A DNA stretch of 64,000 nt from NCBI RefSeq assembly GCF_006345805.1, contig NC_043001.1, positions 108,624,001-108,688,000 on the forward strand, in the 5' to 3' direction. The DNA comes from Octopus sinensis. Lineage: Eukaryota. Numbering within the stretch: the first letter of the stretch is position 1; each line of letters opens with the position of its first letter. The notes under the pieces are model-generated. The model had not been told where the DNA came from. It saw only the letters and a program-made list of their open reading frames with translations, and made no database searches. This document shows, piece by piece, positions 29,966 to 60,777 of the stretch. The position numbers were made by a program, and so were the translations under genes.

Positions 29966-30748
29966 CGCTTTAGGGTTAGGGTTAGGGTATTAAAATTTTG
30001 ATATTATTGGCTCTGGTCTTTGTTCATACAGGCACAAATAAAATCTTATACATTTATTGTGAAGAAGGAGCCCTAAAAAATGTCTTATATGCCTTATTCA
30101 AATATGCACCACTATAGGATTTAATGTCTGGGTTAAATACTCAAGTATTTAAACCAGACATATTGAAACTGACCAGATCCAGTCTTTCACACCTACCCTA
30201 CAATGTCATTCTAAAAATAAACAATCATCATCATCATCATTGTTTAACATCCATTTTCCATGCTGGCATGGGTTGGATAGCTCGACTGGGGTCTGGGAAG
30301 CCAGGAGGCTGCACCAGGCCCCAATCTGATCTGGCAGTGTTTCTACAGCTGGATGCCCTTCCTAACGCCAACCTCTCCGAGAGTGTAGTGGGTGCTTTTT
30401 ATGTGCCACCTGTACAGGGGCCAGGGGAGCTGGCATTGACCACAATCGGATGATGCTTTTTGTGCCACCGGCACTGGCATTGGCCACATTCAGATGGTAC
30501 TTTTTACATGCCACCGGCACATCATCAAAATTTCAAGGTTATGAGATACTTCATTAATTTTTTAAAATGTAGATAATTAAGCATTATTTTTGATGAATTG
30601 ATTTGAATGCTGAAGTGTTAAAACCACAGAACTTTAAACAAGACAATTTCGATAGTTTGCTTCTTGTCTCAAATTTGAGTCAGTAAATTATTTACTTCAG
30701 TAACTCTTAATAAAGCTTTCAGGAAATGGTTTTTACCGTGTTTTACAC

Positions 30749-32220: not shown

Positions 32221-34432
32221 TATACTTACACATGACAACACACCCCTTCACTCACTCTCTTTCTCTTTCACACACACACACATGTCTATTTCATATGTTT
32301 GTACATACATCTTGCACTTCAAAACAAAAGTAAATGAATAATAAATTTTTACAGAAATTAACGAACTCTGGATGATGAAATCGCATTCAGCTAAAAATAT
32401 TTCAAAATGATTAAAATATTGTGTACATCAAAAAGTCAATGGTTTTTTTTTTGTCTTCTTAGAGAGCACGAAGACAATGTGTGTGTATATGTCACAGGTA
32501 GCAAACGTGTGTTTGTGTCAATTGACATGCCATTATGTGTGTGTATTCTGTACGTGTGCTGACATCATGGAAGCCATGTATTTTTTCAAGACGTAACAAA
32601 ATTTGCCTTTCATCCTTTCAGAGTTGAAAAATTAAGTATCAGTTGCATACTAAGGTCGATGTAAAAGACTGGCACCCCTCCCCCAAAATTTCGGGCCTTG
32701 TGCCTAGAGAAGAAAAGAATCTTCTTCAATGCAAAGGCAGCAAGCTGGCAGAAACGTTGGCATGCCAGGCGAAATGCTTAGTGGTATTTCGTCTGTTTTT
32801 ACATTCAAAGTTCAGATTCCTCCAAGGTCAGCTTTGCCCTTCACCCTTTCGGAGTTGATAAATTAAGTACCAGTTGCATACTGGGGTCGATCTAATCAAC
32901 TGGCTCCCTCCATAAAACTTTTGGGTCTTGTGCCTAGAGTAGAAAAGAATAACCACTTGTAACTGTTGTTAATTACTACATCAAAAATACAAACTCAGGT
33001 AGCCTGTTGCTCAGGTAAGTCCTGTATAGTTGCTATTCTCACCAGAATATCAAGAAAATCTTGTTTCTGTTCTTAAATTACTTTATGTTAATTAAGAAAG
33101 TGATGCACAGTCAGTCGGCTGCACCATAGTCACAAACACCATAAACTGTATAATACAGAATATATTAGTATTCAATATCGGTAAATTATCGGAAATTTAT
33201 GTTGAGTAGTTATTTTGTGGTGTATAAATAAGCACAAAATTTTTTTCAATTTTTAGGAGTAAATAGAATAATTTATTAACCAAAAGCTAAAATTTTATTA
33301 GCACAGGTGCAGACATTGCTTCCCAACCACATGGTTCTGGGTTCAGTCCCACTGCGTGGCACCTTGAGCAAGTGTCTTCTACTATAGCCTTGGGCCCAAA
33401 CAAAGCTTAGTGAGTGGATTTGGTAGACGTAAACTGAAAGAAGCCCATCATGTATATATATGTGTGTGTATGTGTCTTCCCTGACCCCACCATCACCTGA
33501 CAACCAATGTTTGCGTCCCTGTAACTTAACAGTTTGGCAAAAGAGTCTGATAGAATAAGTACTGGGGTCGATTTGTTCAACTAAAAGAGGTGCTCCAGCA
33601 TGGCCACAGTCAAATGACTGAAACAAGTAAAAGAATCATCATCATCATCTTTTAACGTCCGCTTTCCATGCTGGCATGGGTTGGACGATTTGACTGAAGA
33701 CTGGCGAACCAGATGGCTGCACCAGGCTCCAATCTGATCTGGCAGAGTTTCTACAGCTGGATGCCCTTTCTAACGCCAACCATTCTGAGAGTGTAGTATG
33801 AAAGAACATAAGGCATATGGCTGTTTTCCGGCCAAACAATCCGTTTCTATGCTTTACCATTTTACAAAAATGGACACCTCACACAACTAGAGGACCCAAA
33901 TTTTACTGATAACTTAACATTGTTGTTTTGCAGTCATCACCAGATGCTGGACAAGAAACTGAAACTATCAACAACTTTGAAGAAAGCTGGACTACAAATT
34001 CTGATAAACATGACCAGTGTAAAACCAGTAAACCTGGAGGAGGTGAGGGCTTTCACATACCTGCACAGCATTGTTGTACACACCCAAAAAGAAATAAATA
34101 AAATAGCACCACAGCAGACAAGGTAAGAATCGGCAAAGCCTGGCCAGCTTTTCTGTAGCTTAATTGAAGAATATCTCATGCTCCAGAATTCAAACCATAC
34201 CCCTAAGGATCAAATGTTAAAACAGTGGTAAACTATGAGGCTAAATCTAATGGCACTGACTAGACAACTCACAGGAAGGAGCAAATCTTCCTAAACAGCT
34301 GCTCAGTTCTCTGGTCATATAAAACCATCCACATTGATCTCTAAGGACTCTACATGAGATTAACATGGGGTAACTGACACACTATGAACACCAGTAACCA
34401 GCAATACCAGTGAAGTGTTTACATGGAATACT

Positions 34433-37566: not shown

Positions 37567-38889
37567 CTAAGGATCATCAGGAATGGAAAGAGACTTAAAG
37601 TATTGCAAAGCTCTGTAAACACTATTTCCACAAATATTAAAGGTGGGATGTGTGGGTCTCACTTCGTTATCCTCTCCCCCAAGGATGTGTAAAGCGAGTT
37701 TAGAGCCGTTATGCTGAGCGATAGACAATCCGCTCAGGCAATAACAAGTGTGATAGAAGTCCCGGGATTTCTTAGGTTTGTCACGAAGACCGCCACGCAT
37801 GTGTTGACAACAAGTTAATACATACTCCTGCAAAGCACCAGAATGAAACACCCAGGTGTCCGCAGGAAACCCAAGTTCACCTTGTTGTTGTAAAGCCGAC
37901 TGCAAAAGCGCAATGGCACCACCTTGCCAAAACGAGTAACAACCATCAACCAGTTTTTCAGTGCGACCTTGAAAACCTCCTTCGAATTTCATTTGTCTGT
38001 TTGCAATCCAACGAAGCAACAATTTAGTATCACACAAATGGAGTTTGCCTAAAAGACACAAGGCAGCGAGTCCGCAGAAAGTGTAACCACCGTGGGCCTC
38101 CAAACCTGGGCGCCCGGCAAACCCACCTTCGTATGTCTGGCAACTTGCCACCCATTCTGGTGACAGGTAAAACAACTTTGAACAACTGGAAATAATATTG
38201 CTGAGTACAGCAGCACTAGCAACGAGGTAGATTCCACGGACATCGGTTTCGCCGTTTTCATGGAGAGTAAAAGAACCATCAGGTTGTTTCATACGAAAGA
38301 AGAACGACAACAATTTCGGTCTGTCTATCACATCAAAACTGTGTTTAGTGCCTAGAATACATAAAGCGTTAACTGCAGCGTAAGTAGAAGCGAGGTGAGG
38401 CTCTTGTCCGGGTCCTCCGCCGAAACCTCCATTCGGATGTTGACAGCGATTTAAGAAATTTGCAATATTAGTCTCTAATTCCGAAGAAAGCGGTAGGGCG
38501 TCTAAGAGGTCAAGGCTGTGAAGAATCCAGTAACATATCCAAGTTCGGCTGGCATCGAGGCATTGGTAAGAGATTCCCAACTCTCGAAGACCTGCTGTCA
38601 GGAATTCAATGTGCCGTTTCCTTTTTAAAGACGGAGGAGCAGAGGAATTGGTCGGTCTGTCGATGAAGATTTCCTCAGAACCAGAATCGTCTTTGCTGCT
38701 TTTTTCCATTTCGCCGAAGTATTTCGCTCGAGCAGCCAAGAACATTTTTTCGATTTCTTTCTCAACATTTCCCTGCTCGTACGAAGTATCGGTGGGTATT
38801 CCATCGTTTTTCAGGCGACTCGCCGCAAGGACACCGTCTTCAATATTCTCTGCATAGCGAGGAACAAGATGTTTAATTTCTGCCGCCAT
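37567..38889 (-). CDS. FNTB: Protein farnesyltransferase subunit beta, single-exon CDS, 440 aa
   Basis: CLDASRTWICYWILHSL, GGFGGGPGQEPHLASTYAAV, CQTYEGGF...EAHGGYTFCG, EGGFQGR..KLVDGCYSFWQ and RDFYHTCYCLSGLS (Zn ligands D, C, H present). ATG in AGCATGG context at 38889; the track ORF starts at an upstream GTG. AATAAA at 37538-37543. Confidence 0.97.
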   Translation of the reverse strand: MAAEIKHLVPRYAENIEDGVLAASRLKNDGIPTDTSYEQGNVEKEIEKMFLAARAKYFGEMEKSSKDDSGSEEIFIDRPTNSSAPPSLKRKRHIEFLTAGLRELGISYQCLDASRTWICYWILHSLDLLDALPLSSELETNIANFLNRCQHPNGGFGGGPGQEPHLASTYAAVNALCILGTKHSFDVIDRPKLLSFFFRMKQPDGSFTLHENGETDVRGIYLVASAAVLSNIISSCSKLFYLSPEWVASCQTYEGGFAGRPGLEAHGGYTFCGLAALCLLGKLHLCDTKLLLRWIANRQMKFEGGFQGRTEKLVDGCYSFWQGGAIALLQSALQQQGELGFPADTWVFHSGALQEYVLTCCQHMRGGLRDKPKKSRDFYHTCYCLSGLSIAQHNGSKLALHILGGEDNEVRPTHPTFNICGNSVYRALQYFKSLSIPDDP

Positions 38890-39750: not shown

Positions 39751-41619
39751 ATATACTACTTATGAGTAATTCTGTATTTTCAGCTAGAGTGTAGTACATA
39801 CGAATATACCAGCCCGTGGCGCAATAAAATGTAGGCTCACGGATGTTACCCCACCCCACCCGATTTAGACAATCCCCTATTATGAAACTAAGAACTTCCT
39901 GCGTCACTAAGCATTCGCTGATAAAACTGGCAATTAAATCATGCATTGTAATACATTTGTGGGAAGTAGGTTAGTCAAATACATTGACCTCAGTGCTTAA
40001 CTGGTACTTTGTTTTGTTGACTCCGAAAGAATGATATTGGTAAAGTTGACTGCGGCGTGATTTGACCTCAGAACGTAAACAGTTAGACGAAATACCTATT
40101 TCTTTATTACCCACAAGGGGCTAAACACAGAGGAGACAAACAAGGACAGACAGACGGGAACAAACGGATCAAGTCGATTATATCGAACCCATTGCGTAAC
40201 TGGTACTTATTTAATCGACCCCGAAAGGGTGAAAGGCAAAGTCGACCTCGGCGGATTTTGAACTCAGAACGTAACGGCAGACGAAATGCCGCTTAGCATT
40301 TTATCCGAAGTGCTAACGATTCTGATACTGCGTCAGCAAAAATTAGCAAATAATAATAAAGTTGTATGATGACCGTAAGACTTTTTCCTCGGCCGAATGC
40401 ACCCGCCCCAAACTATTTATCCCACAACTTACCAGCTAAATGAAATCACTAGCTATTTAGATTATAAATAAAAATTTTACCTAACAAATACACAGAACAC
40501 TAACATATAATTTTTATGCATGTGCACATACGCAAACATTTCTTTTATTTATACTTTCAATATCTCTTCCAACTATATTTAAAGCCATTCTACTTTTTCC
40601 AGAAAAAATTCAAAAACTGTAATTTCAGGGGAGATAATCTAGGTTCCCCATTAAATGCGTTGACTACTGCGCCACCTGACGGTCTGTAATAAAACGAATT
40701 GTTTGAGTTGAATGTCTTTGGTGTTTCTACCTCTTATGAGCTTCAAGGATTTACTTTTAGGTAATAATAACAATAATAATAATGATCTGAGATATTTTTA
40801 TGTCTCTGTTTACTCTATTAATCACCTCTCGTGTATTGCAGCTTATATTTTTTATTATATTTGTTATATATATGTATGTATATATATATATGTGTGTGTG
40901 TGTGTGTATGTTTCTTCTCAAGTTGCATATGGAGGCCTTTAAAAAATTTGTACATTACATCTGATGAATTTATACTAAATGTACCGATTATTTCAATTAC
41001 TTTTTGGCTCTTTATTATTAATTCGTAAATTTTAAATGTACATTAATTAATTAATCAATATTTTTAGACACACAAAGTTACTTTTCTATGTCGATTTCAT
41101 GCCTGAAAATTACAATGAAAATCATGGTTTTCCCCTAAAATGCATATGGTAGACTATTTGGATTATAATTTCAATAAAACCGCAAACTGCCTTTGTGATT
41201 ACATGTAAACTTTAGATCAGATAATCTCTTAAATATAGAACCCCAAAATAGTTTTTTCTTTCTTTTCAAGTTAATCCGATGTCTAAACTTATGTTACATT
41301 TAATAACAAACATTGATCTTAAGTTATATAATATTTTTTAATTATAAAGGAAAAGTGCTTTTTCGAGGAGGGCAGTTGTCTATATCAAATAAGACCGTTA
41401 AAGGAAATCGAGTATTCAATATGATCCTCTTTACCGCTGCTGTATTTATTTATGCCTACCACATAGAGGTAGTATTAAAATAATAATAATTAAAAGGAGA
41501 AAAGTATTCGCTCTTAAAGATTTGTTAGTTTTTTCTTATTGATCAGTAATTTATCTTAAATTTGAAATTTGTTTGGTTGTAGTTTATCATCCATAAGTTA
41601 GTGTAGTCATCGTTTTTTG

Positions 41620-44274: not shown

Positions 44275-44974
44275 TAAGTGTAGGAAGAAATGGAGCTGAA
44301 CGAAGATTTAACAAAATTCCTTTTTATTATTTTCTACATATGTTTCGTGCTTTTTCTGTTGTGATTTTTGCTACCCAGGTATCGGTTATCATTTGAATTA
44401 TCCGTAATAAGATAATTCATTTATCTACTTCAATAATATATATATATATATAAAATAGCATTTAGCATAGCAAAAGGGAGAAAGAGATCATTCTCGAATA
44501 AATATGAATCACATGAAAAAGGAAATAAATGCTGGCACCACATGAAAAGCATCCAGTACACTCTGTGAATGGATGGCATTAGGAAAGGCATCCATCCATA
44601 GAAACAATTGGAATACGATGCAGCCCTTGGATTCCTCAGATCTTCTCAAACCAGCCAGCCAGCCAGCCATGCTTTAATGGAACATGGGTATTAAAGGACA
44701 GTAGTGATGTGTTCATAGTCCTACATGGTTCCTTTCAAAATCTGTTCTGTTTGTGGTTAAGAGTATCCTTATCCAAACATTCTAAATACTATGTACAATG
44801 GGGTAAGTTAGAGACCTAAGTACAAGCTAAATAATTCCTTAGCCTCCTCTCTCTGTAGACTGAGTTGAAATCATCTAACCAAGATGATTTTCAGGATCAG
44901 CAAAAATAAATGGTTGTGATTGATGTATTAGCTGTAGATCCAGTTGATTTGTACTCATTATCTACTAATTTCAT

Positions 44975-46100
44975 CATCATCATCGTTTAACGTCCGTTTT
45001 CCGTGCTAGCACGGGTTGGACGGTTCGACCGGGGTCTGGGAAGCCAGGAGGCTGTACAAGGTTCCAGTCTGATCAGGCAGAGTTTCTACAGCTGGATGCC
45101 CTTCCTAACGCCAACCACTCCGTGAGTGTAGTGGGTGCTTTTTACGTGCCAGGGAAGGCTGGCACGTCTACGACCGGTTGATGCTTTTTACGTGCCACCA
45201 GCACAGGTATCACAACGACAATTTCCATTTGATATTTATTTTGATGTTGATGTACTTGACTCAATAGGTCTCCTCAAGCACAACAGGTCATGTGCCACCG
45301 GCACAGAAGCCAGTCAAGGCGGTGCTGACATCGGCCACGTTCGGATGGTACTTTTTACGTGCCGCCGGCACAGGTATCGTAACTACAATTTCCATTTGAT
45401 ATTTGTGGTTTTATGATAGTCTGAGAAATGAGTCTTATGTTTTGTGTTCCAGTGACAATCAGTTGTTTAGTCCCCTGTTCGCTGTAATCAACCGTTAATC
45501 TTTTCCTTTCTGTTTTTTGTAGTACATTGTCCATGATGTCTTTCCTTTTTAAAGACATTAGAATCTGATTTGAGGGAGATTTGGTTGCTGCTTCTAGCAG
45601 GTCATACAACCATGTAGATGCTCCCTCGTTTGCTTTAAGATGAATTAGAAATAGCTATGCCTGCTTCTACATCCTTGTTTCAAACCTCAGCAGAGACAGC
45701 TTTGCCTTTCATCCCTTCAACATCAGCAAGTAAGTAACAATTATGTCCTAAGTTTACTTTATTCAGCACAATGTACTAATCCTGTATCATCATCATCATC
45801 ATCGTTTAACATCCGTTTTCCATGCTAGCATGGGTTGGACGGTTCAATCGGGGTCTGGGAAGTCAGGAGGCTGCACAAGGCTCCAGTCTTATCTGGCAGT
45901 GTTTCTACAGCTGGATGCCCTTCCTAACACCAAACATTCTGTGAATGTAGTGAGTGCTTTTTACATGCCACCGGCACAGGTGCCAGGGGAGGCTGGCAAC
46001 GGTCACGATTGATTGGTGCTTTTTACGTGCTACCGGCACAGGTATCACAACTACAATTTCCATTTGATTTTTTTATGTTGATGTACTTGACACAATAGGT
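44975..46100 (-). mobile_element. Two SINE copies with (GAT)n tails, family C (about 44975-45410 and 45785-46100)
   Basis: CATCATCATCGTTTAACGTCCG...CTGGATGCCCTTCCTAACGCC. The family also occurs at 28700, 30229, 33636, 56950 and in the array spacers. Confidence 0.75.
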
Positions 46101-46502
46101 CTCTATTTTTATGGTGTGTAAAGTTCTGCTGAACAACCGATTAATGTGTGTGCACATAGGCCCATAAAAACTACCTTTCACATCTACACACACACACTTA
46201 CACATAAGACTGTCAGTGGGGAAGGCAAATGGCACTGGTGCACTGAACTGGTGGTATTTTTGAAAAGAAAAAGACATTGAAAGTCTACTACTAGGCATAG
46301 GAGTGGCTGTGTGGTAAGTAGCTGTAGGCATAGATGATGATGATGACTGGTCTGTCATTATCATCAACTGGCACAAAAATAAAGAAGATACACTGAAAAA
46401 TACTGAAAATACAGAACCCACCAACACCACCTTCACCCTAAACTATGAACCAAGGCTTGAAAGTATCTGAGAAAGACAGTTTGGGATAGGGGTATGCTGA
46501 CT

Positions 46503-49500
46503 AAGATGTAGTTTATATGAGGGCTTTGAACCCTAATTTCTACAATGCTAGTAACTTAACTGCCATTTATAAACTAGTTTTTGCAACCTGGAAATTTGAT
46601 TGAAGATTTTAATTTAGATCTTTAAAACAGGAAATTTATATCATAGAACCAGGGTTGGTATGAAAAGGGTCAAATTGCATTGCTATCATTTTTGGATAAA
46701 GGGCCAATGCTGTGGATTATGGAAGAGTCAGAAAATGGGAAATACGGCATTTGTATGTTATGATTATTTTCTTTATTGCAACTTGTAGACAGTGATGTCA
46801 TTGATGACGGATCTGTAAAGGGACCAGTTAAGGGGTCACTGCCTTTCTGATTGTTATGGTGACAAGGCATTGTCTAAGTTGAGGGAACAAATATCATGTG
46901 TGGTACACACACATACATACACAAGCAATGGTCAGTATATAAAGTACTCAGATGTTATTGTCTGAACTACATTGGAAGCCTGAAGTACTTTCAGGCAGAT
47001 AGTGTTTGTATATATATATACTTGACCTGACAGTAAAGTTCTCCAGGTACATAGTGCTCAGGTTAACTTATGTATCTGTGTCTCCAGAGCCTGGTATAAA
47101 TTCTTTAAAATAATATGTGTAGCTAGTGCTCTCTCTCTCTCTCTGGGTATATATATATAAGAGACAAAAGTGTATGTATGCTGCTATATGTATATAAAAA
47201 AAAAATACAAAATATGGGACAAGAACGCAAAACATCCAGGCACATGATACAAAAAAGGGACAAGAAAAACAAGGATGGGTCATTTGGAGTTTTCTTTTGT
47301 TAGTTGAGTTCCAGATTATATTTGCAGTTTTGACTGGTTATACTCTGGACTGCTCCAATCTGGCCAGCCCGAAAGGAAATCTAAGCCAAGAGCACTAGAT
47401 TCCTTGGAAGAAAGCAGCGAATGTATACGAAAACTAGGACAGCGGGGGGCAGAGAAATGGTACACAAATACAAATGCAAAGAACAGGACATTAACAACAG
47501 GTGTCTTTTGACTAAGGATGAATTAAATTAAGACATAAGAGATGACAGGCATGGGAAGGAATATAGATATTGCATGGGTGGTAGTCAAACCAAGAAAGGT
47601 CAGGCTTTGCTGAACACCAGTCACATGGAAGGAGAGGAGCGCGGTAGAGACAGAGGGATAGAAGAATTAGGGAGGGACAAGAAAAAAGAAAAGATACAGA
47701 GTAAAGCGAAAGAGAAGGGAAGGTGAGAATGAAGAGAAGGCTAGGAAATGTGAGAGGGTGCGGAGCGAAAGAACAAAGTAAGTGTGAAGGGGCTGATTGA
47801 AAGAATGAAAGGAGCAGTCCCAAATATAACCAGCCGAAACTGCAAAGATAATCTAGAACTTGACTGAGTTCTTTATTGCAACTTGTAGACAGTGATGTCA
47901 TTGATGACAGATCTGTAAAGGGACCAATTAATGGTTCACTGCCTTTCTGATTGTTATGGTGACAAGGCATTGTCTAAGTTGAGGGAACAAATATCATGTA
48001 TGGTACACACACACACACACATACATACACAAGCAATGGTCAGTATATAAAGTACTCAGATTTTATTGTCTGAAATACATTGGAAGCCTGAAGTACTTTC
48101 AGGCAGATAGTGTTTGTATATATATACTTGACCTGACAGTAAAGTTCTCCAGGTACATAGTGCTCAGGTTAACTTGTGTATCTGCGTCTCCAGAGCCTGG
48201 CATAAAGTCTTTAAAATAATATGTATAGCAAGCGGTCTCTCTCTCTTTATCGCTGGGTATATATGTATATATATTTATATTTATTGAACCTCTCAAAGGC
48301 AGTGACTTATGACTGAGACCTTTGGCAATGTGCTGTGCTTGAGAGGGCCCAACAAGCCAAGTGGACCCATGCTGGTGGCACATAAAGAACACCTTTCAAG
48401 AAGCAAAGTGGCTGAGTTCTTTTCAGGCATTGGGCCTCACGGAAGCAATGACTGAGACCTTTGGCATTATGTCATGCTTGAGAAGAAGACCCATCAAGCC
48501 AAGCAAAGGCACAGTTGTGGCAGATACCAGTGTGACACAAATTGGTATCCATGCCAGTGGCACGTAAAAACACTCTGGTTTCATGCAAATGGCACGTAAC
48601 AGCACCCATTACACTCTTAGAGTGGTTGGCGTTCAGGAAGGGCATCCAGCCATAGAAAACGATACCAAATCAGACTTGAGTCTGGTGCAGCTTACCGGTC
48701 AAACCATCCAACCCATGCCAGCATGGACAATGGATGTTAAATGATGATGATGATGATGACATGTGCGCGCGCGCACACACTCACACACACACACAGAGGC
48801 ACTGGTGTGGTTGTTCACGAGAAGTTTTCTTCCTATTCACATGGTCTCAACTTCTGTTCCACTGCATGGCCCCTTGGGGCAAATGTCTTCTACTATAGCC
48901 CCCAACTATGATGTAGTTTATGTGAGGGGTTTGAACCCTGATTTCTACAATGCTAGTAACTTAACTGCCATTATTAAACTAGTTTTTGCAACCTGGAATT
49001 TTGATTGAAGCTTTTAATTTAGATCTTTAAAACAAGAAATTTATATTAATGTGGATTAAAGAAGAGTCAGAAAATGGGGAAATATGGCATTTGTATGTTC
49101 TGATTATTTTCTTTATTGCGCTTGTATACAGTGATGTCATTGATGACAGATCTGTAAAGGGACCAGTTAAGGGGTCACTGCCTTTCTGATTGTTATGGTG
49201 ACAAGGCATTGCGTAAGTTCAGGGAACAAATATCATGTATGGTACACACACACACACATACATACACAAGTAATGGTCAGTATATAAAGTACTCAGATTT
49301 TATTGTCTGAAATACATTGGAAGCCTGAAGTACTTTCAGGCAGATAGTGTTTGTATATATATACTTGACCTGACAGTAAAGTTCTCCAGGTACATAGTGC
49401 TCAGGTTAACTTATGTATCTGTGTCTCCAGAGCCTGGTATAAAGTCTTTAAAATAATATGTGTAGCTAGTGCTTTCTCTCTCTCTCTCTCTCTCCTCTCC

Positions 49501-52500
49501 CTCTCTCTCTCTCTGGGAATATATATATAAGAGACCAAAGTGTATGTATGCTGCTATATGTATATAAAAAAGAATACAAAAAAGGGACAAGAAAATCATC
49601 CAGACATATGATACGAAAAAAGGACAAGGAAAACAAGGATGGGTCATTTGGAGTTTTCTTTCGTCAGTCGAGTTCCAGATTATCTTTGCAGATTTGGCTG
49701 GTTATACTCGGACTGCTCTAATCTGACCAGCCCGAAAGGAAATCTAAGCTAAGAGCACTAGATTCCTTGGAAGAAAGCAGTGAATGTATATGAAAACAAG
49801 GATGGGGAAAAAAAACCCAGAGAAATGGTACACAAATACAAGTGCAAAGAACAGGACATTAACAACAGGTGTCTTTCGACTAAGGACAAATTAAAACATA
49901 AGAGATGACAGGCATGGGAAGGAATATAGATATTGCACGGGTGGTAGTCAAACCAAGAAAGAAAGGTCAGGTTTGGCTGAACACTGGTCACATGGAAGGA
50001 GAGGAGAGTGGTAGAGGCAGATGGAGAGAAGAATTAGGGAGTGACAAGAAAAAAAAAAAGGGGGACAGAGTAAAGCGAAAGAGGGGGGAAGGTGAAAATG
50101 AAGAGACGGCTAGAAAATTTGAGAGAGGGGGAACGAAAGAACAAAGTAAGTGTGAAGGGGCTGATAGAAAGAATGAAAGGAGCAGTCCCAAATATAACCA
50201 GCCAAAACTGCAAAGATAATCTGGAACTCGACTGAGTTCTTTATTGCAACTTGTAGACAGTGATGTCATTGATGACAGGTCTGTAAAGGGACCAGTTAAT
50301 GGGTCACTGCCTTTCTGATTTTTATGGCAACAAGATATTGTCTAAGTTGAGGGAACAAATATCATGTATGGTACACACACACATGCACACAAGCAATGGT
50401 CAGTATATAAAGTACTCAGATTTTATTGTCTGAACTACATTGGAAGCCTGAAGTACTTTCAGGCAGATGGTGTTTGTATATATATATACTTGACCTGACA
50501 GTAAAGTTCTCCAGGTACATAGTGCTCAGGTTAACTTATGTATCTGTGTCTCCAGAGCCTGGTATAAATTCTTTAAAATAATATGTGCAGCTAGTGCTTT
50601 CTCTCTCCCTCCCCCTCTCTCTTTCTCTCTTTATCTCTGGGTATATATGTATATATATTTATTGAACCTCACAAAGGCAATGACTTGTGACTGAGACCTC
50701 TGGCAATGTGCTGTGCTTGAGAGGGCCCAACAAGCCAAGTGGACCCAGCTGGTGGCACATAAAGAACACCTTTCAAGTAGCAAAGTGGCTGAGTTCCTTT
50801 TAGGCATTGGGCCTCACGGAAGCAATGACTGAACCTTTGGCATTATGTCATGCTTGAGAAGACCCATCAAGCCAAGCAAAGTTGCACTTGTCGCAGATAC
50901 CGGTGTCAGGCAAATTGACACCGATGTGGGTGGCACGTAAAAACACCCTGTCATGCAAATAGCACATAAAAGCCCCATTACACTCTTGGAGTGGTTGGCG
51001 TTTAGGAAGGGCATGCAGCCGTAGAAAACGATGCCAAATCAGACTTGAGGATGGTGCAGCTTACCAGCCCAGTTAAGCCATCCAACCCATGCCAGCATGG
51101 ACAATGGATATTAAATGATGATGATGATGATGACATGAACACACACATACAGAGGCACAGGTGTGGTTGTGCATAAGAGGTTTGCTTCCTATTCACGTGG
51201 TCTCAAATTCTGTTCCACTGCATGGCCCCTTAAGGCAAATGTCTTCTACTGTAGCCCCCGACTATGATCTAGTTTATGTGAGGGGTTTGAACCCTAATTG
51301 CCACAATGCTAGTAACTTAACTGCCATTATTAAACTAGTTTTTGCAACCTGGAATTTTGATTGAAGATTTTAATTTAGATCTTTGAAACAGGTAATTTAT
51401 ATCATAGAACCAGGATTGGTATGAATGGGTCAAATTACATTGCTTTCATTTTTGGATAAAGGGCCAATGCTGTGGATTATGGAAGAGTCAGAAAATGGGA
51501 AATATGGCATTTGTATGTTATGATTATTTTCTTTATTGCAACTTGTAGACAGTGATGTCATTGATGACAGATCTGTAAAGGGACCAGTTAAGGGAACACT
51601 GCCTTTCTGATTGTTATGGTGACAAGGCATTGTCTAAGTTGAGGGAACAAATATCATGTATGGTACACACACACACACACACAAACACACAGAAGCAATG
51701 GTCAGTATATAAAGTACTCAGATTTTATTGTCTGAACTACATTGGAAGCCTGAAGTACTTTCAGGCAGATAGTGTTTGTATATATATACTTGACCTGACA
51801 GTAAAGTTCTCCAGGTACATAGTGCTCAGGTTAACTTATGTATCTGTGTCTCCAGAGCCTGGTATAAAGTCTTTTTAAAGTAATATGTGTAGCGAGTGCC
51901 CTCTCTCTCTCTCTCTCTGGGTATATATATATATAAGAGACCAAGGTGTACGTACGGTGCTATATGTATATAAAAAAGAATACAAAAAAGGGACAATAAA
52001 ACAAGGACAGGTCATTTGGAGTTTTCTTTCATAAGTTGAATCCAGATTATCTTTGCAGTTTCGGCTGGTTATACTCGGGACTATTCTAATCTGGCCAGCC
52101 CCAAAGGAAGTCTAAGCTAAGAGCACTAGATTCCTAGGTAGAAAGCGGCGAATGTATACGAATACAAGGATGGGGGAAAAAAATGGAGAAATGTTACACA
52201 AATACAAATGCAAACAACAGGTGTCTTTTGACTAAGGAAGAATTAAATTATGACATAAGAGATGACAGGCATGGGAAGGGATATAGATATTGCATGGGTG
52301 GTCGTCAAACCAAGAAAGGTCAGGCTTTGCTGAACACTGGTCACATGGAAGGAGAGGAGAGAGGTAGAGGCAGATGGATAGAAGAATTAGGGAGTGACAA
52401 GAAAAAAAGAAAAGGGACAAAGTGAAGTGAAAGAGGAGGGAAGGTGAAAATGAAGAGAAGGCTAGGAAATGTGAGAGAGGGAGAGCAAAAGAACGATGTG

Positions 52501-54235
52501 TGAAGGGGCTGATAGAAAGAATGAAAGGAGCAGTCCCAAGTATAACCAGCCAAAACTGCAAAGATAATCTGGAACTTGACTGAGTTCTTTATTGCAACTT
52601 GTAGACAGTGATGTGATTGATGACAGGTCTGTAAAGGGACCAGTTAATGGGTCACTGCCTTTTTGATTGTTATGGCAACAAGATATTGTCTAAGTTGATG
52701 GAACAAATATCATGTATGGTACACACACACACACACACAATGGTCAGTATATAAAGTACTCAGATTTTATTGTCTGAACTACATTGGAAGCCGGAAGTAC
52801 TTTCAGGCAGATAGTGTTTGTATATATATACTTGACCTGACAGTAAAGTTCTCCAGGTACATAGTGCTCAGGTTAACTTGTGTATCTGTGTCTCCAGAGC
52901 CTAGTATAAATTCTATAATATAATGTGTAGCTTTCGCTCTCTCTCTCCTCTCTTTCTTTCACTCTCTCTGGGTATATATGTATATATAATTCTATTTATT
53001 GAACCGCACAGAGGCAATGACTTGTGACCAAGACGTTTGTCTATGTGCTGTGCTTGAGAGGGCCCGACAAGCCAAGTGGACTCATGCTGGTGGCACATAA
53101 AGGACACATTTCAAGTAGCAAAGTGGCTGAGTTTCTTTCGGGCTTTGGGCCTTAGGGAAGCAATGACTGAGACCTTTAGCATTATGTCATGCTTGAGAAG
53201 ATCCATCAAGCCAAGCAAAGTTGCAGTTGTGGTAGATAACAGTGTCGGGCAAATTGATACCCATACCAGTGGCACGTAAAAGTACCTTGGTGTCATGCAA
53301 ATGGCACGTAAAAGCACCCATTACAGTCTTGGAGTGGTTGGCGTTTAGGAAGGGCATCCAGCCATAGACAACGATGGCAAATCAGACTCGAGTCTGGTGC
53401 AGCTTACCAGCTTACCTGTCAAACCATCCAACCCATGTCAGCATGGACGATGGATGTTAAATGATGATGATGACTTGTGGGCACACACACACACACACAC
53501 AGAGGCACTGGTGTGGTTGTTCATAAGAGGTTTGCTTCCTATTCACATGGTCTCAAATTCTGTTCCACTGCATGGCCCCTTAGGGCAAATGTCTTCTACT
53601 GTAGCCCCCGACTATGATCTAGTTTATGTGAGGGCTTTGAACCCTAATTGCCACAATGCTGGTAACTTAATTGCCATTTATAAACTAGTTTTTGCAACCT
53701 GGAATTTTGATTGAAGATTTTAATTTAGATCTTTAAAACAGGAAATTTATATCATAGGACCAGGGTTAGTATGAAAAGGGTCAAATTACATTGCTTTCAT
53801 TTTTGGATAAAGTGCCTATGCTATGGATTATGGAAGAGTCAGAAAATGGGGAATACGGCATTTGTATGTTATGATTATTTTCTTTATTTCAACTTGTACA
53901 CAGTGATATCATTGATGACAGATCTGTAAAGGGACCAGTTAAGGGGTCTCTACCTTTCTGAATGTTATGGCGACAAGATAGTGTCTAAGTTGAGGAAGCA
54001 AATATAATGTATAGTACACACACACACACAAGCAATGGTCAGTATATAAAGTACTCAGATTTTATTGTCTGAACTACATTGGAAGCCTGAAGTATTTTCA
54101 GGCAGATAGTGTTTGTATATATATACTTGACCTGACAGTAAAGTTCTCCAGGTACATAGTGCTCAGGTTAACTTGTGTATCTGTGTCTCCAGAGCCTGGT
54201 ATAAATTCTTTAAAATAATATGTGTAGCTAGTGCT

Positions 54236-54267
<32 letters not shown>

Positions 54268-55521
54268 CTGGGTATATATATATATATATATGTATATTTA
54301 TATCTATTGAATCTCACAGAAGCAATGACATGTAACCAAGACCTTTGGCAATGTGGTGTGCTTGAGAGGGCCCGACAAGCCTAGTGGACCCATGCTGGTG
54401 ACACATAAAGAACTCCTTTCGAGTGGCATAGTGGCTTTGAGCATTAGGCCTCTCAGAAGCAATGACTGAGACCTTTGACATAATGTCATGCTTGAGAAAA
54501 CCCATCAAGCCAAGCAAAATTGCAGTTGTCACAGATACCAGTGTCAGACAAATTGGCACCCTTTCCAGTGGCACGTAAAAACACCCTGGGGTCATGCAAA
54601 TAGCACATAAAAGCACCCATTATACTTTTGGAGTGGTTTGGCATTTAGGAAGGGCATCCAGCCATAGAAAACAATAGAAAATCAGACTTGAGTCTGGTGC
54701 AGCTTACCAGTCAAACCATCCAACCCATGCCAGCATGGACAATGGATATTAAATGATGACAATCATACACACACACACACACACACACACAGAGGCACAG
54801 GTGTGGTTGTTCACAAGAAGTTTGCTTCCTATTCACATGGTTTCAAATTCTGTTCCATTGCATGGTACCTTAGGGTAAATTTCTTCTACTGTAGCCCCCG
54901 ACTATGATCTAGTTTATGTGAGGGCTTTGAACCCTAATTGCCACAATGCTGGTAACTTAATTGCCATTATTAAACTAGTTTTTGCAACCTGGAATTTTGA
55001 TTGAAGATTTTAATTTAGATCTTTAAAACAGGAAATTTATATCATAGGACCAGGGTTAGTATGAAAAGGGTCAAATTACATTGCTTTCATTTTTGGATAA
55101 AGTGCCAATGCTATGGATTATGGAAGAGTCAGAAAATGGGGAATACGGCATTTGTATGTTATGATTATTTTCTTTATTTCAACTTGTACACAGTGATATC
55201 ATTGATGACAGATCTGTAACGGGACCAGTTAAGGGGTCTCTACCTTTCTGAATGTTATGGCGACAAGATAGTGTCTAAGTTGAGGAAGCAAATATAATGT
55301 ATAGTACACACACACACAAGCAATGGTCAGTATATAAAGTACTCAGATTTTATTGTCTGAACTACATTGGAAGCCTGAAGTATTTTCAGGCAGATAGTGT
55401 TCGTATATATATACTTGACCTGACAGTAAAGTTCTCCAGGTACATAGTGCTCAGGTTAACTTGTGTATCTGTGTCTCCAGAGCCTGGTATAAATTCTTTA
55501 AAATAATATGTGTAGCTAGTG

Positions 55522-55557
<36 letters not shown>

Positions 55558-56790
55558 ATATATTTATATCTATTGAATCTCACAGAAGCAATGACATGTA
55601 ACCAAGACCTTTGGCAATGTGGTGTGCTTGAGAGGGCCCGACAAGCCTAGTGGACCCATGCTGGTGACACATAAAGAACTCCTTTCGAGTGGCATAGTGG
55701 CTTTGAGCATTAGGCCTCTCAGAAGCAATGACTGAGACCTTTGACATTATGTCATGCTTGAGAAAACCCATCAAGCCAAGCAAAATTGCAGTTGTCACAG
55801 ATACCAGTGTCAGACAAATTGGCACCCTTGCCAGTGGCACGTAAAAACACCCTGGGGTCATGCAAATAGCACCTAAAAGCACCCATTATACTTTTGGAGT
55901 GGTTTGGCATTTAGGAAGGGCATCCAGCCATAGAAAACAATAGAAAATCAGACTTGAGTCTGGTGCAGCTTACCAGCTTACCTGTCAAACCATCCAACCC
56001 ATGCCAGCATGGACAATGGATATTAAATGATGACGATGATACACACACACACAGAGAGGCACAGGTGTGGTTGTTCACAAGAAGTTTGCTTCCTATTCAC
56101 ATGGTTTCAAATTCTGTTCCATTGCATGGTACCTTAGGGTAAATGTCTTCTACTGTAGCCCCCGACTATGATCTAGTTTATGTGAGGGCTTTGAACCCTA
56201 ATTGCCACAATGCTGGTAACTTAATTGCCATTATTAAACTAGTTTTTGCAACCTGGAATTTTGATTGAAGATTTTAATTTAGATCTTTAAAACAGGAAAT
56301 TTATATCATAGAACCAGGGTTTGTATTAAAAGGGTCAAATTATGTTGCTTTCATTTTTGGATAAAGGGCCAATGCTGTGGATTATGGAAGAGTCAGAAAA
56401 TGGGAAAATATGGCATTTGTATGTTATGATTATTTTCTTTATTGCAATTTGTAAACAGTGATATCATTGATGACAGATCTGTAAAGGGACCAGTTAAGGG
56501 GACACTGCCTTTCTGATTGTTATAGTGACAAGGCATTGTCTAAGTTGAGGGAACAAATATTATGTATGGTACACACACACACACACTGGTCAGTATATAA
56601 AGTACTCAGATTTTATTGTCTGAACTACATTGGAAGCCTGAAGTACTTTCAGGCAGATAGTGTTTGTATATATATACTTGACCTGACAGTAAAGTTCTCC
56701 AGGTACATAGTGCTCAGGTTAACTCGTGTATCTGTGTCTCCAGAGCCTGGTATAAACTCTTTAAAATAATATGTGTAACTAGTGCCCGCT
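46503..56790. repeat. Higher-order tandem array: (B-C-P-C-S)x3, (B-C-S)x2, B-C; 9 copies of module C
   Basis: B starts at about 46503, 48905, 51262, 53610, 54900, 56162 (periods about 2.4, 2.36, 2.35, 1.29, 1.26 kb). P is a Penelope-like fragment with an inverted arm; S is SINE-derived. Confidence 0.95.
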
Positions 56791-57283
56791 GTCTCTGTCT
56801 CTTTCTCTCCACTCACCCACACACCCACCAGCCAGGTAACCTTGTACCTCCTCTACAGCAAGACACCTGCTTCTTTCTCTCTATAACCTTTCATCATCCG
56901 ACACAAGAACATCTCTTCCAATGACTTCTCCGCTCTCAAAAGAGATTGTTTTTCCTCTTGTAAGTACCTGGTAGCCCTGTCAGTGCAGGTGCCACTTAAA
57001 AGCACCCAGTCCACACTGTAAAATGGTTTTGGCGTTTGGAATGAAGGCAACCAGCTGTAAAAACCTAGCCAAAACTGACCTCGCTTGTGCTTGTGCCACG
57101 TAAGAAGTGCCTAATCCCCTCTGCTGAATGGTTGGTGATAGGAAAGGCATCCAGCTGTAAAAATCCTGCCAAAACAGTTACAGAAACCTGGTGCAGGCTT
57201 CTGCCTGGTTGGCTCTTGTGAAACCATCCCACCCGTGCCAGCATGGAAGGCAGACGTTAAACGATAGTGATGATGATGATGGA

Positions 57284-58313: not shown

Positions 58314-59018
58314 CAGGGTCTGATGAATAAGTATCTGGAATGCTGCCATAGTAACACAGCTAAAACATGTAGACTGAAGCCGCTTGGCAAATATTGAGGT
58401 TGAACCCTGCTGTGCATGCGCATTAAGTTTTAACGCTCTAGCTCACTTCCACTGTTTACAGCCATGCTTGGAAGGAACATGTGTAGCGTGTGATTGTTGC
58501 ATTGACCATAACAGAGAAAGTTGTCATGGCGATACCTGCTCAGAGGCCTGCGCAAAGTTGCAGAAAGTGTATGGAGAGGAGTGTATGAGCTGCACACAAG
58601 TGTATGAGTGGTTCAGACGTTTCCAAGATGGCCAAAAAAATGTCAATATTGATGAACGTTTTGGGAGACCCGCAACCAGCAGAACTGAGAAAAACATTGC
58701 AGATTAGTTATGGTTCAGTTCGGTCCATTATCACTGAAGATTTTGGTATGCGAGGCGTGTCTGCCAACTTTGTGCTAGAACTGCTTTCAGCTGACCAAAA
58801 AGCTACTCGGGTTTCAGTTACACAAGATCTCCTTGATTATGGTGAGAATGATGAAAAATTTTTGAAAACTTGGCTTAGGCCTCTGAGCAAATATAGCCAA
58901 GCTTTTGTCAAAATTTGATGCAGATTCTCTGCTCAACTTCCTCTGTCATGGTCAATGCAACAATCACATGCTACACACCTTCCTTCCAAGCACTGCTGTC
59001 AACAGCAGAAGTGAGCTA
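58314..59018. mobile_element. Mariner remnant: plus-strand 5' half fused to an inverted second 5' segment (58869-59018)
   Basis: TA|CAGGGTCTG start; LQKVYGEECMSCTQVYEWFRRFQDG...DERFGRP and ISYGSVRSIITEDFGMRGVSANFV. The inverted copy reads MTEEVEQRICIKF*QKLG. Confidence 0.8.
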
Positions 59019-59055: not shown

Positions 59056-59074
59056 TTTTTACTTCTCTTTTCAG
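59056..59074 (+). promoter_or_regulatory. Splice acceptor of the KAT5 coding exon
   Basis: TTTTTACTTCTCTTTTCAG|, 221 nt upstream of the ATG; a short uORF (MFL*) at 59081. Confidence 0.7.
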
Positions 59075-59247
59075 ATTGAAATGTTTTTGTGAGACCTGTT
59101 ACCATTTCAATAACACCAGTTATAACTTCCTCTTTTTCGAGAAAGACAAAGATCCCATCAACCAACAGAGCCTTTTTTTTCAATCATTGTGTTATAAAAT
59201 ACGTGGTTAGGCACAACAAGGGAGATCATAGCTCCACTATACAGTAA

Positions 59248-60777
<1,530 letters not shown>

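What the first reader, a model, noticed from the sequence alone, without database searches (positions are those of the whole stretch)
46503..56790. Nine-copy intronic array with one invariant 50-nt block: candidate amplified non-coding RNA or regulatory element
Seen: TACTTGACCTGACAGTAAAGTTCTCCAGGTACATAGTGCTCAGGTTAACT is identical at 47019, 48125, 49362, 50487, 51787, 52829, 54124, 55412 and 56675. By my count the ~85 nt upstream carry about 7 independent changes and the ~38 nt downstream about 8, and the SINE spacers differ visibly more. On the plus strand the block folds by eye into a hairpin: TTGACCTGA pairs with TCAGGTTAA (one G-U), with a short inner stem and extension through TATATATA/TATGTAT. 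Module C matches no TE family I recognise in this window. Inference: purifying selection on a multicopy small RNA (a miRNA-like cluster co-transcribed with KAT5) or on a protein- or splicing-factor site. The block contains TTCTCCAG|GTACAT and GCTCAG|GTTAAC, which resemble recursive AG|GT sites. The hairpin is weak for a canonical pre-miRNA.
Basis: partly seen in the sequence, partly recalled or inferred. Interest (0 to 1): 0.8.

Follow-up and report, generated by a model that had tools for sequence, protein, structure and literature searches.

The report
Constrained core in octopus KAT5-intron repeat
A 1.0-1.3 kb DNA unit is repeated nine times, most probably inside the non-coding leader intron of the octopus KAT5 gene, and each copy holds a ~140-base segment that changes five to ten times more slowly than the rest, so it is probably functional, but it is not a microRNA and its role is unknown.

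Summary
The 50-nt block occurs nine times without a mismatch, and the invariant run is really 58 nt. It is the 3' end of a ~140-nt low-diversity zone.

The window is Octopus sinensis chromosome CM016863.1. The array lies between FNTB (minus strand) and KAT5 (plus strand), 2.45 kb upstream of an intronless KAT5 coding exon. Conserved splice sites, and squid transcripts spliced at the homologous acceptor, place it in the KAT5 5'-UTR intron on the sense strand. This placement is inferred.

The array is orthologous and restricted to one lineage: 9 copies in O. sinensis, 7 in O. vulgaris, 2 in O. bimaculoides, none in Argonauta or a decapodiform contig. Across 17 copies the flanks carry 0.50 changes per site, the zone 0.093 and the block 0.052 (P about 1e-16). 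Private variants are shared by orthologous copies, so recent homogenisation does not explain the pattern. The zone is also the best-conserved 140-nt window between species.

Purifying constraint is well supported. The miRNA reading fails: the hairpin is weak, there is no Rfam hit, and no substitution is compensatory. The recursive-splice reading fails on weak donor halves. There is no coding frame and no snoRNA boxes. The function is unresolved. My leading guess is a sense-strand structured RNA or cis element of the KAT5 intron.

The parts
46451..56844 (+). Tandem array (macrosatellite) of nine units of 1042-1300 nt. Units u1, u3 and u5 carry spacer B. Units u2, u4, u6, u7 and u8 carry spacer A (SINE fragments) plus an 'X' segment. 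Unit u0 is truncated on its 5' side.
   Evidence: Left edge from homology with the O. vulgaris and O. bimaculoides loci. Unit junctions fall in (CT)n(TA)n microsatellites.
46926..47068 (+). Constrained zone, copy u0. It has a private T>G and a TA insertion in the TA run.
48034..48174 (+). Constrained zone, copy u1. No orthologue in O. vulgaris.
49271..49411 (+). Constrained zone, copy u2. Identical to O. vulgaris copy 1 over 183 nt.
50394..50536 (+). Constrained zone, copy u3. It has an A>G shared with O. vulgaris copy 2, and a TA insertion.
51696..51836 (+). Constrained zone, copy u4. Identical to O. vulgaris copy 3.
52738..52878 (+). Constrained zone, copy u5. It has a T>G shared with O. vulgaris copy 4.
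54033..54173 (+). Constrained zone, copy u6 (reference copy). It runs from a TATAAAG motif through a 98-nt Y-shaped fold to the invariant block. Identical to O. vulgaris copy 5.
55321..55461 (+). Constrained zone, copy u7. Present only in O. sinensis.
56585..56724 (+). Constrained zone, copy u8 (last unit). Orthologue of O. vulgaris copy 6. Compared with O. bimaculoides, this is the best-conserved 140-nt window.
53680..53760 (+). Second, weaker low-diversity block in the X segment, shown here for u6. It is present in 6 of the 9 units and absent from spacer-B units.
45523..45729 (+). Candidate non-coding (5'-UTR) exon upstream of the array. Acceptor TTTTTTGTAG| and donor CAA|GTAAGT are conserved in O. 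bimaculoides and Argonauta. All three frames contain stops.
59074..60777 (+). Last KAT5 exon: 222 nt of 5'-UTR followed by the whole 493-aa CDS (59296-60777). The acceptor TTTTCAG|ATTGAAATG at 59073|59074 is conserved across octopods. Its homologue is the acceptor used in squid transcripts.

Best explanation
What it is:
- A macrosatellite specific to the genus Octopus, made of 1.0-1.3 kb units assembled from SINE debris and unique sequence.
- It grew by unequal exchange at its flanking microsatellites, from at least 2 copies (the O. bimaculoides state) to 7 in O. vulgaris and 9 in O. sinensis.
- It lies in the 5'-UTR intron of KAT5, in the sense orientation.

What each unit holds:
- A ~140-nt non-coding segment under purifying selection in every copy and in all three species. 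It starts at a TATAAAG motif, runs through a Y-shaped 98-nt fold, and ends with the 58-nt invariant run.

My leading mechanism:
- The segment acts as RNA on the KAT5 sense strand. It would be either a structured element of the intron or a small structured RNA released from it.
- Copy number would then set the dose, as in intron-hosted repeated small-RNA arrays.
- It is not a canonical miRNA, snoRNA or recursive splice site.

Shown: the array, its orthology and copy numbers, the rate deficit, the absence of a reading frame, the absence of any Rfam family, and the fold stability.
Inferred: the intronic location, selection as the cause of the deficit, and action at the RNA level.
For: Array:
- Nine exact copies.
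- Unit architecture.

Rate deficit:
- Within O. sinensis the zone has 6 substitutions in 80 nt plus 0 in 58 nt. The neighbouring core has 38 in 145 and 25 in 61.
- On a tree of 17 copies from three species the flanks run at 0.50 changes per site, the zone at 0.093 and the block at 0.052. Poisson P = 8e-17.

Not recent homogenisation:
- O. vulgaris copies pair one-to-one with O. sinensis copies and share their private variants.

Between species:
- The zone is the best-conserved 140-nt window in 3.7 kb of O. sinensis against O. bimaculoides, at 96.4% against a median of 84% over all windows and about 88% in well-aligned stretches.
- The two O. bimaculoides paralogues show the same pattern: they differ by 1 of ~140 nt in the zone and by roughly 7-9% in the flanks, counted by eye from the alignment.

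Intronic and sense:
- Acceptor 59073|59074 is conserved, and squid transcripts are spliced at its homologue.
- Donor 45729|45730 is conserved as far as Argonauta.

Structure:
- The 186-nt + strand folds at -55 kcal/mol with z = -4.2. The minus strand gives z = -1.8.
- The most stable windows of the whole unit fall in the zone.
- Four of the seven substitutions at predicted paired sites keep the pair as G-U, which works only on the + strand.
Against: - No transcript, small-RNA or chromatin data could be consulted, so transcription of the element and the intron assignment in octopus are unproven.
- Contig L020, from another octopodid, is colinear with the genome across the acceptor. It could be genomic DNA or unspliced RNA.
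- No compensatory base change exists (0 of 55 pairs). Three substitutions break predicted pairs.
- The excess of variable sites in unpaired columns is not significant (my own Fisher estimate from the pair table: roughly p = 0.04-0.11).
- The fold could equally reflect a DNA palindrome.
- No known RNA family matches.
- The element is absent from Argonauta and from a decapodiform contig, so it is young.
- Nine redundant copies each under constraint is unexpected for most functions.
- A genome-wide search for further copies was not possible.
Confidence: 0.4

Rival explanations
1. DNA-level cis-regulatory module. The ~140-bp zone is a cluster of protein-binding sites (an enhancer, silencer or insulator for KAT5 and/or the divergent FNTB gene) that was amplified together with its surroundings. 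Selection would then act on binding sites and not on RNA.
For: - The size and sharp boundaries are typical of conserved non-coding elements.
- It lies between two divergently transcribed, conserved neighbours.
- It contains inverted nuclear-receptor-like half-sites, TGGTCA and TGACCT (read directly from the sequence).
- A second conserved block sits in the X segment.
- There is no compensatory change in the predicted RNA helices.
Against: - Redundant enhancers normally relax after duplication, yet all nine copies are constrained.
- The + strand folds much better than the minus strand, and the wobble-preserving changes work only on one strand.
- No motif was tested against any binding-site library.
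Confidence: 0.2
2. Array of TATA-driven alternative promoters, each with a short non-coding first exon. A conserved TATAAAG would direct initiation about 31 nt downstream at CTACATT. The resulting 76-nt exon would end at CAG|GTACAT (or 15 nt later at CAG|GTTAAC) and splice to the KAT5 acceptor at 59074.
For: - TATAAAG is intact in all 18 copies examined, and an Inr-like YYANWYY lies at the canonical distance.
- Conservation starts about 12 nt upstream of the TATA and stops 7 nt after the second GT, as expected for a core promoter plus exon plus donor.
- It has the same orientation as KAT5.
- O. bimaculoides has three RefSeq protein records with one identical sequence. By NCBI convention this suggests transcript variants that differ in their UTRs.
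Against: - Both donors are weak compared with the GTAAGT donors at this locus.
- One O. vulgaris copy has GT>AT at the second donor.
- TATA and Inr matches are common in AT-rich DNA (about a 1-in-20 coincidence by my estimate).
- The sequence upstream of the TATA is a (CA)n microsatellite and diverges freely.
- No transcript evidence was available.
Confidence: 0.13
3. Neutral sequence. The deficit would come from a local mutational cold spot, or from a self-maintaining 'identity island' kept uniform by short-tract or biased gene conversion started at the (TA)n run or the palindrome. No function is involved.
For: - The invariant run abuts a (TA)4-5 tract and an imperfect palindrome, which are potential break and conversion hot spots.
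- u1 and u2 share a variant although they belong to different unit types, which hints at local exchange.
- Copy number changes quickly: 9, 7 and 2 copies.
Against: - Conversion homogenises within a species but does not slow divergence between species. Yet the zone differs by 3-5 of 140 nt between O. sinensis and O. bimaculoides where about 15 are expected.
- Private variants have persisted in orthologous copies since the sinensis/vulgaris split.
- The deficit is spread over many independent branches.
- Neither the zone nor the upstream flank contains CpG, so CpG decay does not explain the contrast (read from the consensus).
Confidence: 0.15
4. One reading: a cluster of miRNA-like hairpins (in the style of C19MC) processed from the KAT5 intron.
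For: - The architecture resembles the known case: SINE-spaced tandem units in an intron with one conserved short core.
- A 66-nt hairpin can be drawn.
- Coleoids have many lineage-specific miRNAs (PMC9699675).
Against: - The hairpin folds at -15.5 kcal/mol with z = -1.6, and 13 of 200 shuffles fold as well.
- In the 186-nt context the 5' arm pairs with upstream sequence instead.
- The putative loop is as invariant as the arms.
- Substitutions in O. bimaculoides and O. vulgaris break arm pairs without compensation.
- There is no Rfam miRNA hit in the zone.
- The sequence is not in the held supplements of the octopus miRNA paper, but those hold no miRNA sequences, so this is not a test.
Confidence: 0.04
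5. One reading: recursive splice sites (AG|GT) that remove the repeat-laden intron stepwise.
For: - The element is probably in a 13.3-kb intron on the sense strand.
- TTCTCCAG|GTACAT is invariant in all 18 copies.
Against: - The 5'ss halves GTACAT and GTTAAC lack the consensus +4 or +5 positions that define known ratchet points.
- The polypyrimidine tract is only 6 nt.
- The second site is lost in one O. vulgaris copy.
- A splice motif of 12-15 nt does not explain 140 nt of constraint.
Confidence: 0.04

Closest known systems
Intron-hosted tandem small-RNA arrays (mammalian SNORD115/SNORD116 clusters; C19MC and the Sfmbt2 miRNA cluster)
   Same: - Kilobase-scale head-to-tail units inside a host transcript.
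- Spacers rich in SINEs that diverge freely.
- One short non-coding core per unit that is kept nearly identical.
- Copy number differs between related species.
   Different: - The octopus core has no C/D or H/ACA boxes.
- It is not a convincing pre-miRNA hairpin.
- It matches no Rfam family.
- No RNA product has been shown.
- The host is the 5'-UTR intron of a protein-coding housekeeping gene, not an imprinted non-coding host.
Macrosatellites with a conserved functional module (DXZ4, D4Z4, RS447)
   Same: - Unit of 1 kb or more, at a single locus.
- Variable copy number.
- A sub-segment of each unit (promoter, CTCF site or ORF) conserved above the rest.
   Different: - Only 2-9 copies, against tens to hundreds.
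- No ORF.
- No binding-site evidence.
- Units are partly SINE-derived and show a 2.35-kb higher-order alternation.
Recursive splice (ratchet) sites of long Drosophila and vertebrate introns
   Same: Juxtaposed AG|GT in a long sense-strand intron, preceded by a pyrimidine run.
   Different: - The donor halves are non-consensus.
- The conserved span is ten times longer than a splice motif.
- Nine evenly spaced copies arise from duplication, not from independent selection for ratchet points.

Membership tests
Canonical animal pre-miRNA / miRNA cluster | A hairpin of about 60 nt whose folding energy is clearly better than shuffled sequence, with about 22-nt paired arms | tested here: not met
   The 66-nt hairpin folds at -15.5 kcal/mol with z = -1.58, and 13 of 200 shuffles fold as well. 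In the 186-nt context the block's 5' arm pairs with upstream GGUCAGUAUAUA instead.
Canonical animal pre-miRNA / miRNA cluster | Arms conserved or compensated while the loop is free to vary | tested here: not met
   The putative loop is invariant. The three substitutions seen in other species lie in the arms. Two of them break pairs, and none is compensated.
Canonical animal pre-miRNA / miRNA cluster | Membership of a described miRNA family | tested here: not met
   Rfam 15 gives no hit at gathering score in the window. At E<=10 nothing falls on the block or on its strand: the mir-297 matches lie on microsatellite, and one chance-level mir-3149 match (E=6.8, 18.5 bits against a gathering score of 100) overlaps the upstream part of the u8 zone on the minus strand. 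MirGeneDB could not be searched.
Canonical animal pre-miRNA / miRNA cluster | Reads of about 22 nt from both arms with 2-nt 3' overhangs | not testable with these tools
   No small-RNA-seq data were available.
Recursive splice site | Located in a long intron on the sense strand | tested here: inconclusive
   A 13.3-kb 5'-UTR intron is inferred from conserved splice sites and from squid transcripts spliced at the homologous acceptor. There is no octopus transcript.
Recursive splice site | A 3' splice site (polypyrimidine tract plus AG) directly followed by a strong 5' splice site (GTAAGT or GTGAGT) | tested here: not met
   The sites read TTCTCCAG|GTACAT and GCTCAG|GTTAAC. Real donors at this locus are GTAAGT. 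The second GT is AT in O. vulgaris copy 2.
Box C/D snoRNA | A C box (RUGAUGA) and a D box (CUGA) near the termini, with a terminal stem | tested here: not met
   There is no UGAUGA on either strand of the zone (read from the alignment). The only UGAUGA lies about 170 nt upstream in the freely diverging core. There are no Rfam snoRNA hits in the zone.
Box H/ACA snoRNA | Two hairpins, an H box (ANANNA) in the hinge, and ACA three nucleotides from the 3' end | tested here: not met
   ACAGUA lies between the two predicted domains, but no ACA occurs 3' of the second hairpin. The 5' domain is a branched 98-nt fold.
Macrosatellite / tandem segmental duplication | Head-to-tail units of 1 kb or more at one locus, with copy number varying between relatives | tested here: met
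   Nine units of 1042-1300 nt. Copy numbers are 7 in O. vulgaris, 2 in O. bimaculoides and 0 in Argonauta at the orthologous site.
Dispersed transposable element | Further copies at unrelated genomic sites | tested here: inconclusive
   There is no copy in the 53 kb of the window outside the array, nor in about 60 kb of flanks from four other cephalopod loci. Spacer SINEs recur at least 6 times in the same sequence. No whole-genome search was possible.
Protein-coding exon | A reading frame kept open in all copies | tested here: not met
   The only frame open through the zone is shifted by a TA insertion in u0 and u3. A protein search with it found nothing.
TATA/Inr core promoter with first exon | A TATA box about 30 nt upstream of an initiator, a downstream splice donor, and mapped transcription starts | tested here: inconclusive
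   TATAAAG is present in 18 of 18 copies, and CTACATT has its A at +32. The donors are weak. No CAGE or transcript data were available.

The most novel reading that the evidence does not exclude
The zone encodes a previously undescribed, Octopus-specific structured RNA of about 100-160 nt. It would be released from, or act within, the 5'-UTR intron of the histone acetyltransferase gene KAT5. Its dose would have been raised from 2 to 7-9 copies in the O. vulgaris/sinensis lineage, making it a new class of intron-hosted repeated RNA outside the snoRNA and miRNA families.
Probability: 0.2. Interest if true: 0.7.

Novelty: new variant of a known kind. Interest (0 to 1): 0.45.

Why it matters
If the constraint reflects function, this is a young regulatory or RNA element. 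It arose in the ancestor of Octopus after the split from Argonauta. It sits inside the transcript of an essential chromatin regulator, KAT5/Tip60. Its copy number has changed three- to four-fold between close relatives.

Cephalopods are known for lineage-specific expansion of RNA-level regulation, namely miRNAs and A-to-I editing. A repeated intronic element that fits none of the known small-RNA classes would add a concrete, experimentally accessible candidate.

The case also shows that paralogue-by-paralogue rate tests, combined with orthologous arrays, can separate selection from concerted evolution in a macrosatellite.

If the element turns out to be neutral, it would be a useful example of a conversion-maintained identity island.

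Tried and rejected
- Rfam, whole window at gathering score and 3.6 kb of the array at E<=10: no family. The mir-297 hits lie on microsatellite.
- tRNA and tmRNA scan: none.
- Coding exon: rejected, because the frame is broken in u0 and u3 and there is no protein homologue.
- Exact 32-mer of the block in the metagenome, prokaryotic-genome and viral collections: no match. These collections hold no cephalopod DNA, so the result is uninformative.
- Full-text search for 21-22-mers of the zone in 8.3 million papers: none.
- Supplements of the octopus miRNA paper: they hold no precursor or mature sequences, so this was not a test.
- Logan transcript contigs for octopus KAT5: none carry the exact O. 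sinensis, O. vulgaris or O. bimaculoides protein. L020 is colinear with the genome and says nothing about splicing.
- nhmmer profile of the core against Argonauta and the decapodiform contig: no homologue.
- Covariation test: no power, with 0 double-sided changes in 55 pairs.
- Hammerhead or other ribozyme, snoRNA, Pol III type-3 gene: rejected on motifs. For Pol III there is no consistent T-run terminator, and a T4 run lies just after the TATA.
- Minus-strand terminal exon (AATAAA with a GT-rich downstream element, and CTGTCAG| as acceptor): considered. The AG is lost in both O. bimaculoides copies and the AATAAA is lost in u0, so I dropped it.
- A covariance-model search was not run, because sequence-level search had already found nothing and no covariation exists to exploit.


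Full report
**Observation.** The 50-mer occurs exactly nine times on the + strand at the stated coordinates. There is no near-match elsewhere and none in shuffled sequence. Spacings are 1042-1300 nt. Tandem Repeats Finder misses the array because the period exceeds 500 nt. The repeat finder and a MAFFT alignment of the units show the architecture:
- A core of about 375 nt is common to all nine units.
- It is preceded either by spacer A plus an 'X' segment (u2, u4, u6, u7, u8; u0 has X only) or by an unrelated spacer B (u1, u3, u5).
- This gives a 2.35-kb higher-order period in the older part of the array.
- Unit junctions lie in (CT)n(TA)n microsatellites, and a (CA)n tract sits inside the core.

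**How unusual is the invariance.** The invariant run is 58 nt: TATATATA plus the block. The figures within O. sinensis are:

| Region | Substitutions | Pairwise diversity |
|---|---|---|
| Upstream core | 38 in 145 nt | 8.2% |
| 80 nt before the run | 6 in 80 nt | 2.1% |
| Invariant run | 0 in 58 nt | 0 |
| 61 nt after the run | 25 in 61 nt | 10.4% |

A run of this length is improbable against the whole core (p = 2e-5). It is only marginal (p = 0.05) inside the low-diversity zone. The feature to explain is therefore a ~140-nt zone, for example 54033-54173. Among the five spacer-A units this zone is the clear minimum of a diversity profile over the whole 1.3-kb unit. It has 1-3 variable columns per 60 nt, against 6-15 in unique sequence and 12-24 in SINE sequence. 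The consensus of the zone and of the upstream flank contains no CpG, so CpG decay does not create the contrast.

**Where it is.** A farnesyltransferase-beta ORF lies on the minus strand at 37567-38889. An exact-protein look-up identifies the window as assembly GCA_006345805.1, chromosome CM016863.1, which I take from memory to be Octopus sinensis. The array therefore lies 2.45 kb upstream of the KAT5 ATG and is not in a coding intron.

The coding exon nevertheless begins at a textbook acceptor, TTACTTCTCTTTTCAG|ATTGAAATG at 59073|59074:
- The acceptor is conserved in O. vulgaris, O. bimaculoides, a fourth octopodid (L020) and Argonauta hians.
- Similarity collapses immediately upstream of it.
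- KAT5 transcripts assembled from a decapodiform (L002-L006) are spliced on a related genome contig (L015). A 5'-UTR exon ends at TTG|GTAAGT about 1 kb from FNTB. It is joined across about 4.9 kb to the homologue of this acceptor.

Upstream of the array, 45523-45729 looks like a non-coding exon. Its acceptor TTTTTTGTAG| and donor CAA|GTAAGT are both conserved in Argonauta, and it has stops in all frames. I therefore infer that the array lies in a ~13.3-kb 5'-UTR intron of KAT5 on the sense strand. No octopus transcript was available to prove this. L020 is colinear with the genome across the acceptor.

**Orthologues.** The 90% protein cluster of KAT5 contains annotated proteins from other cephalopods. 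Their loci could be fetched.
- O. vulgaris has seven copies of the block, six exact and one with CAGG>CAGA. It lacks the equivalents of u1 and u7.
- O. bimaculoides has two copies, separated by a spacer-A-type unit. They carry 1 and 2 mismatches in the block, CCTGACAG>CCAGACAG in both.
- Argonauta, whose whole FNTB-KAT5 interval is covered, and the decapodiform contig have none, even with a --max nhmmer profile search.

The O. vulgaris copies pair one-to-one with O. sinensis copies and share their private variants. Examples are u5 and Ovul_4 with T>G, u6 and Ovul_5 with C>T, and u3 and Ovul_2 with A>G. Three pairs are identical over 183 nt. The paralogues have therefore evolved independently since before that speciation, and the uniformity of the zone is not recent homogenisation.

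**Rate test across species.** I built a neighbour-joining tree of 17 copies from the flank columns and counted Fitch parsimony changes:

| Region | Changes | Columns | Per site |
|---|---|---|---|
| Flanks | 74 | 148 | 0.50 |
| Zone | 13 | 140 | 0.093 |
| 58-nt run | 3 | 58 | 0.052 |

The Poisson probability is 8e-17. Between O. sinensis u8 and the O. bimaculoides unit, the zone is the best-conserved 140-nt window in 3.7 kb. It is 96.4% identical, against a median of 84% over all windows and about 88% in well-aligned stretches. A block in the X segment comes close at 95.7%. Gene conversion can make paralogues alike but cannot slow divergence between species. I therefore take purifying constraint on each copy as the best reading. 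A mutational cold spot or biased conversion remains as a minority alternative.

**What the zone is not.**
- It is not coding. The only open frame is shifted by a TA insertion in u0 and u3, and it has no protein relatives.
- It is not a known RNA family.
- It is not a convincing pre-miRNA. In context its 5' arm pairs with upstream sequence. The loop is as invariant as the arms, and the substitutions seen in other species break arm pairs without compensation.
- It is not a snoRNA. There is no UGAUGA in the zone, and no ACA after the second hairpin.
- It is not a typical recursive splice site. The donor halves are GTACAT and GTTAAC, whereas the real donors nearby are GTAAGT. One copy has lost the second GT.
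- It is not a dispersed repeat in the sequence available. The spacer SINEs recur at least 6 times in the same window.

**What it might be.**
- The + strand of the 186-nt region folds at -55 kcal/mol (z = -4.2). It forms a Y-shaped 98-nt domain closed by GGUCAGUAUAUA/UAUAUACUUGACC, plus a second hairpin. The minus strand gives z = -1.8.
- In a sliding scan the most stable windows of the whole unit fall in the zone.
- The RNAalifold consensus of 15 distinct copies keeps this fold. It has no double-sided change. Four one-sided changes keep a G-U pair, which is possible only on the + strand, and three break a pair. This is suggestive and not significant.
- Alternatively, the zone starts about 12 nt before a TATAAAG that is intact in all 18 copies. 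An Inr-like CTACATT lies at the canonical +32. A 76-nt stretch then runs to CAG|GTACAT, and conservation ends 7 nt after the second GT. This would fit an array of alternative promoters with first exons. The donors are weak, and such motifs are frequent in AT-rich DNA.

**Verdict.** The context (intronic, sense to KAT5) is plausible by homology. The function is open. I rank the readings as follows:

| Reading | Confidence |
|---|---|
| Sense-strand RNA-level element | about 0.3-0.35 on its own |
| Constrained intronic element acting as RNA (the compound statement) | 0.4 |
| DNA-level regulatory module | 0.2 |
| Neutral conversion or cold spot | 0.15 |
| Promoter plus first exon | 0.13 |
| miRNA cluster | about 0.04 |
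| Recursive splicing | about 0.04 |

Noticed in passing
window 59296-60777 (+) and 37567-38889 (-): KAT5 and farnesyltransferase-beta both have intronless coding sequences and lie head-to-head. The same arrangement is present in O. vulgaris, Argonauta hians and a decapodiform contig (L015). The gap between them is 6-8 kb there, against 20.4 kb in O. sinensis.
   Followed up: partly
window 59059-59083; L015 about 9790-9898; L004 about 327: A conserved 5'-UTR acceptor (TTTTCAG|ATTGAAATG) lies 222 nt upstream of the KAT5 ATG. Squid-type transcripts are spliced at its homologue, from an exon about 1 kb from FNTB. This suggests a shared bidirectional promoter region.
   Followed up: yes
window 45523-45729 (+): A 207-nt non-coding exon candidate has its acceptor and a CAA|GTAAGT donor conserved in O. 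bimaculoides (95% identity) and Argonauta. All three frames contain stops.
   Followed up: partly
window 40736-40767 and 40918-40946: Two short blocks are conserved with Argonauta about 1.8-2 kb from the FNTB start. The first ends in TAG|GTAATA. They may be the KAT5 first exon or promoter.
   Followed up: no
window about 53680-53760 (u6); also near 46598, 49003, 51359, 54999 and 56263: A second low-diversity block (AAACTAGTTTTTGCAACCTGGAATTTTGATTGAAGATTTTAATTTAGATCTTTAAAACAGG) lies in the X segment of six units. It is nearly as conserved with O. bimaculoides as the main zone, and it is absent from spacer-B units.
   Followed up: partly
window 47189-48294 (u1) and 54294-55581 (u7); L012/L022: O. 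vulgaris lacks the equivalents of u1 and u7 (7 copies against 9). O. bimaculoides has 2 copies. In the flank-based tree the O. bimaculoides copies nest among O. sinensis paralogues, so either part of the amplification is older than that split or the tree is unresolved.
   Followed up: partly
window 58384-58707 (+): A fragment of a mariner/Mos1-type transposase (Pfam HTH_48, E = 3e-8) lies between the array and KAT5. The surrounding ~350 nt (57.9-58.25 kb) are absent from O. bimaculoides.
   Followed up: partly
window 30231-30408, 44974-45151, 45793-45970, 33639-33795, 28793-28935, 57126-57273: Dispersed copies (70-78% identity) of the SINE that forms part of spacer A. A second short repeat from the start of the X segment recurs at 5686, 7603, 16705, 31873, 33316, 43955 and 63170.
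   Followed up: no
window 2-3 kb, 8-11.7 kb, 15-18 kb, 22-23.6 kb: Very long compound microsatellites of the (CATA)n, (TATG)n and (CT)n kinds produce spurious ORFs of 110-246 aa on both strands.
   Followed up: no
L020 (Logan SRR11869384): A contig from a further octopodid species (about 91% nucleotide identity to O. sinensis, O. vulgaris and O. bimaculoides alike) is colinear with the genome across the 5'-UTR acceptor. It could not be decided whether it is genomic DNA or unspliced RNA.
   Followed up: partly
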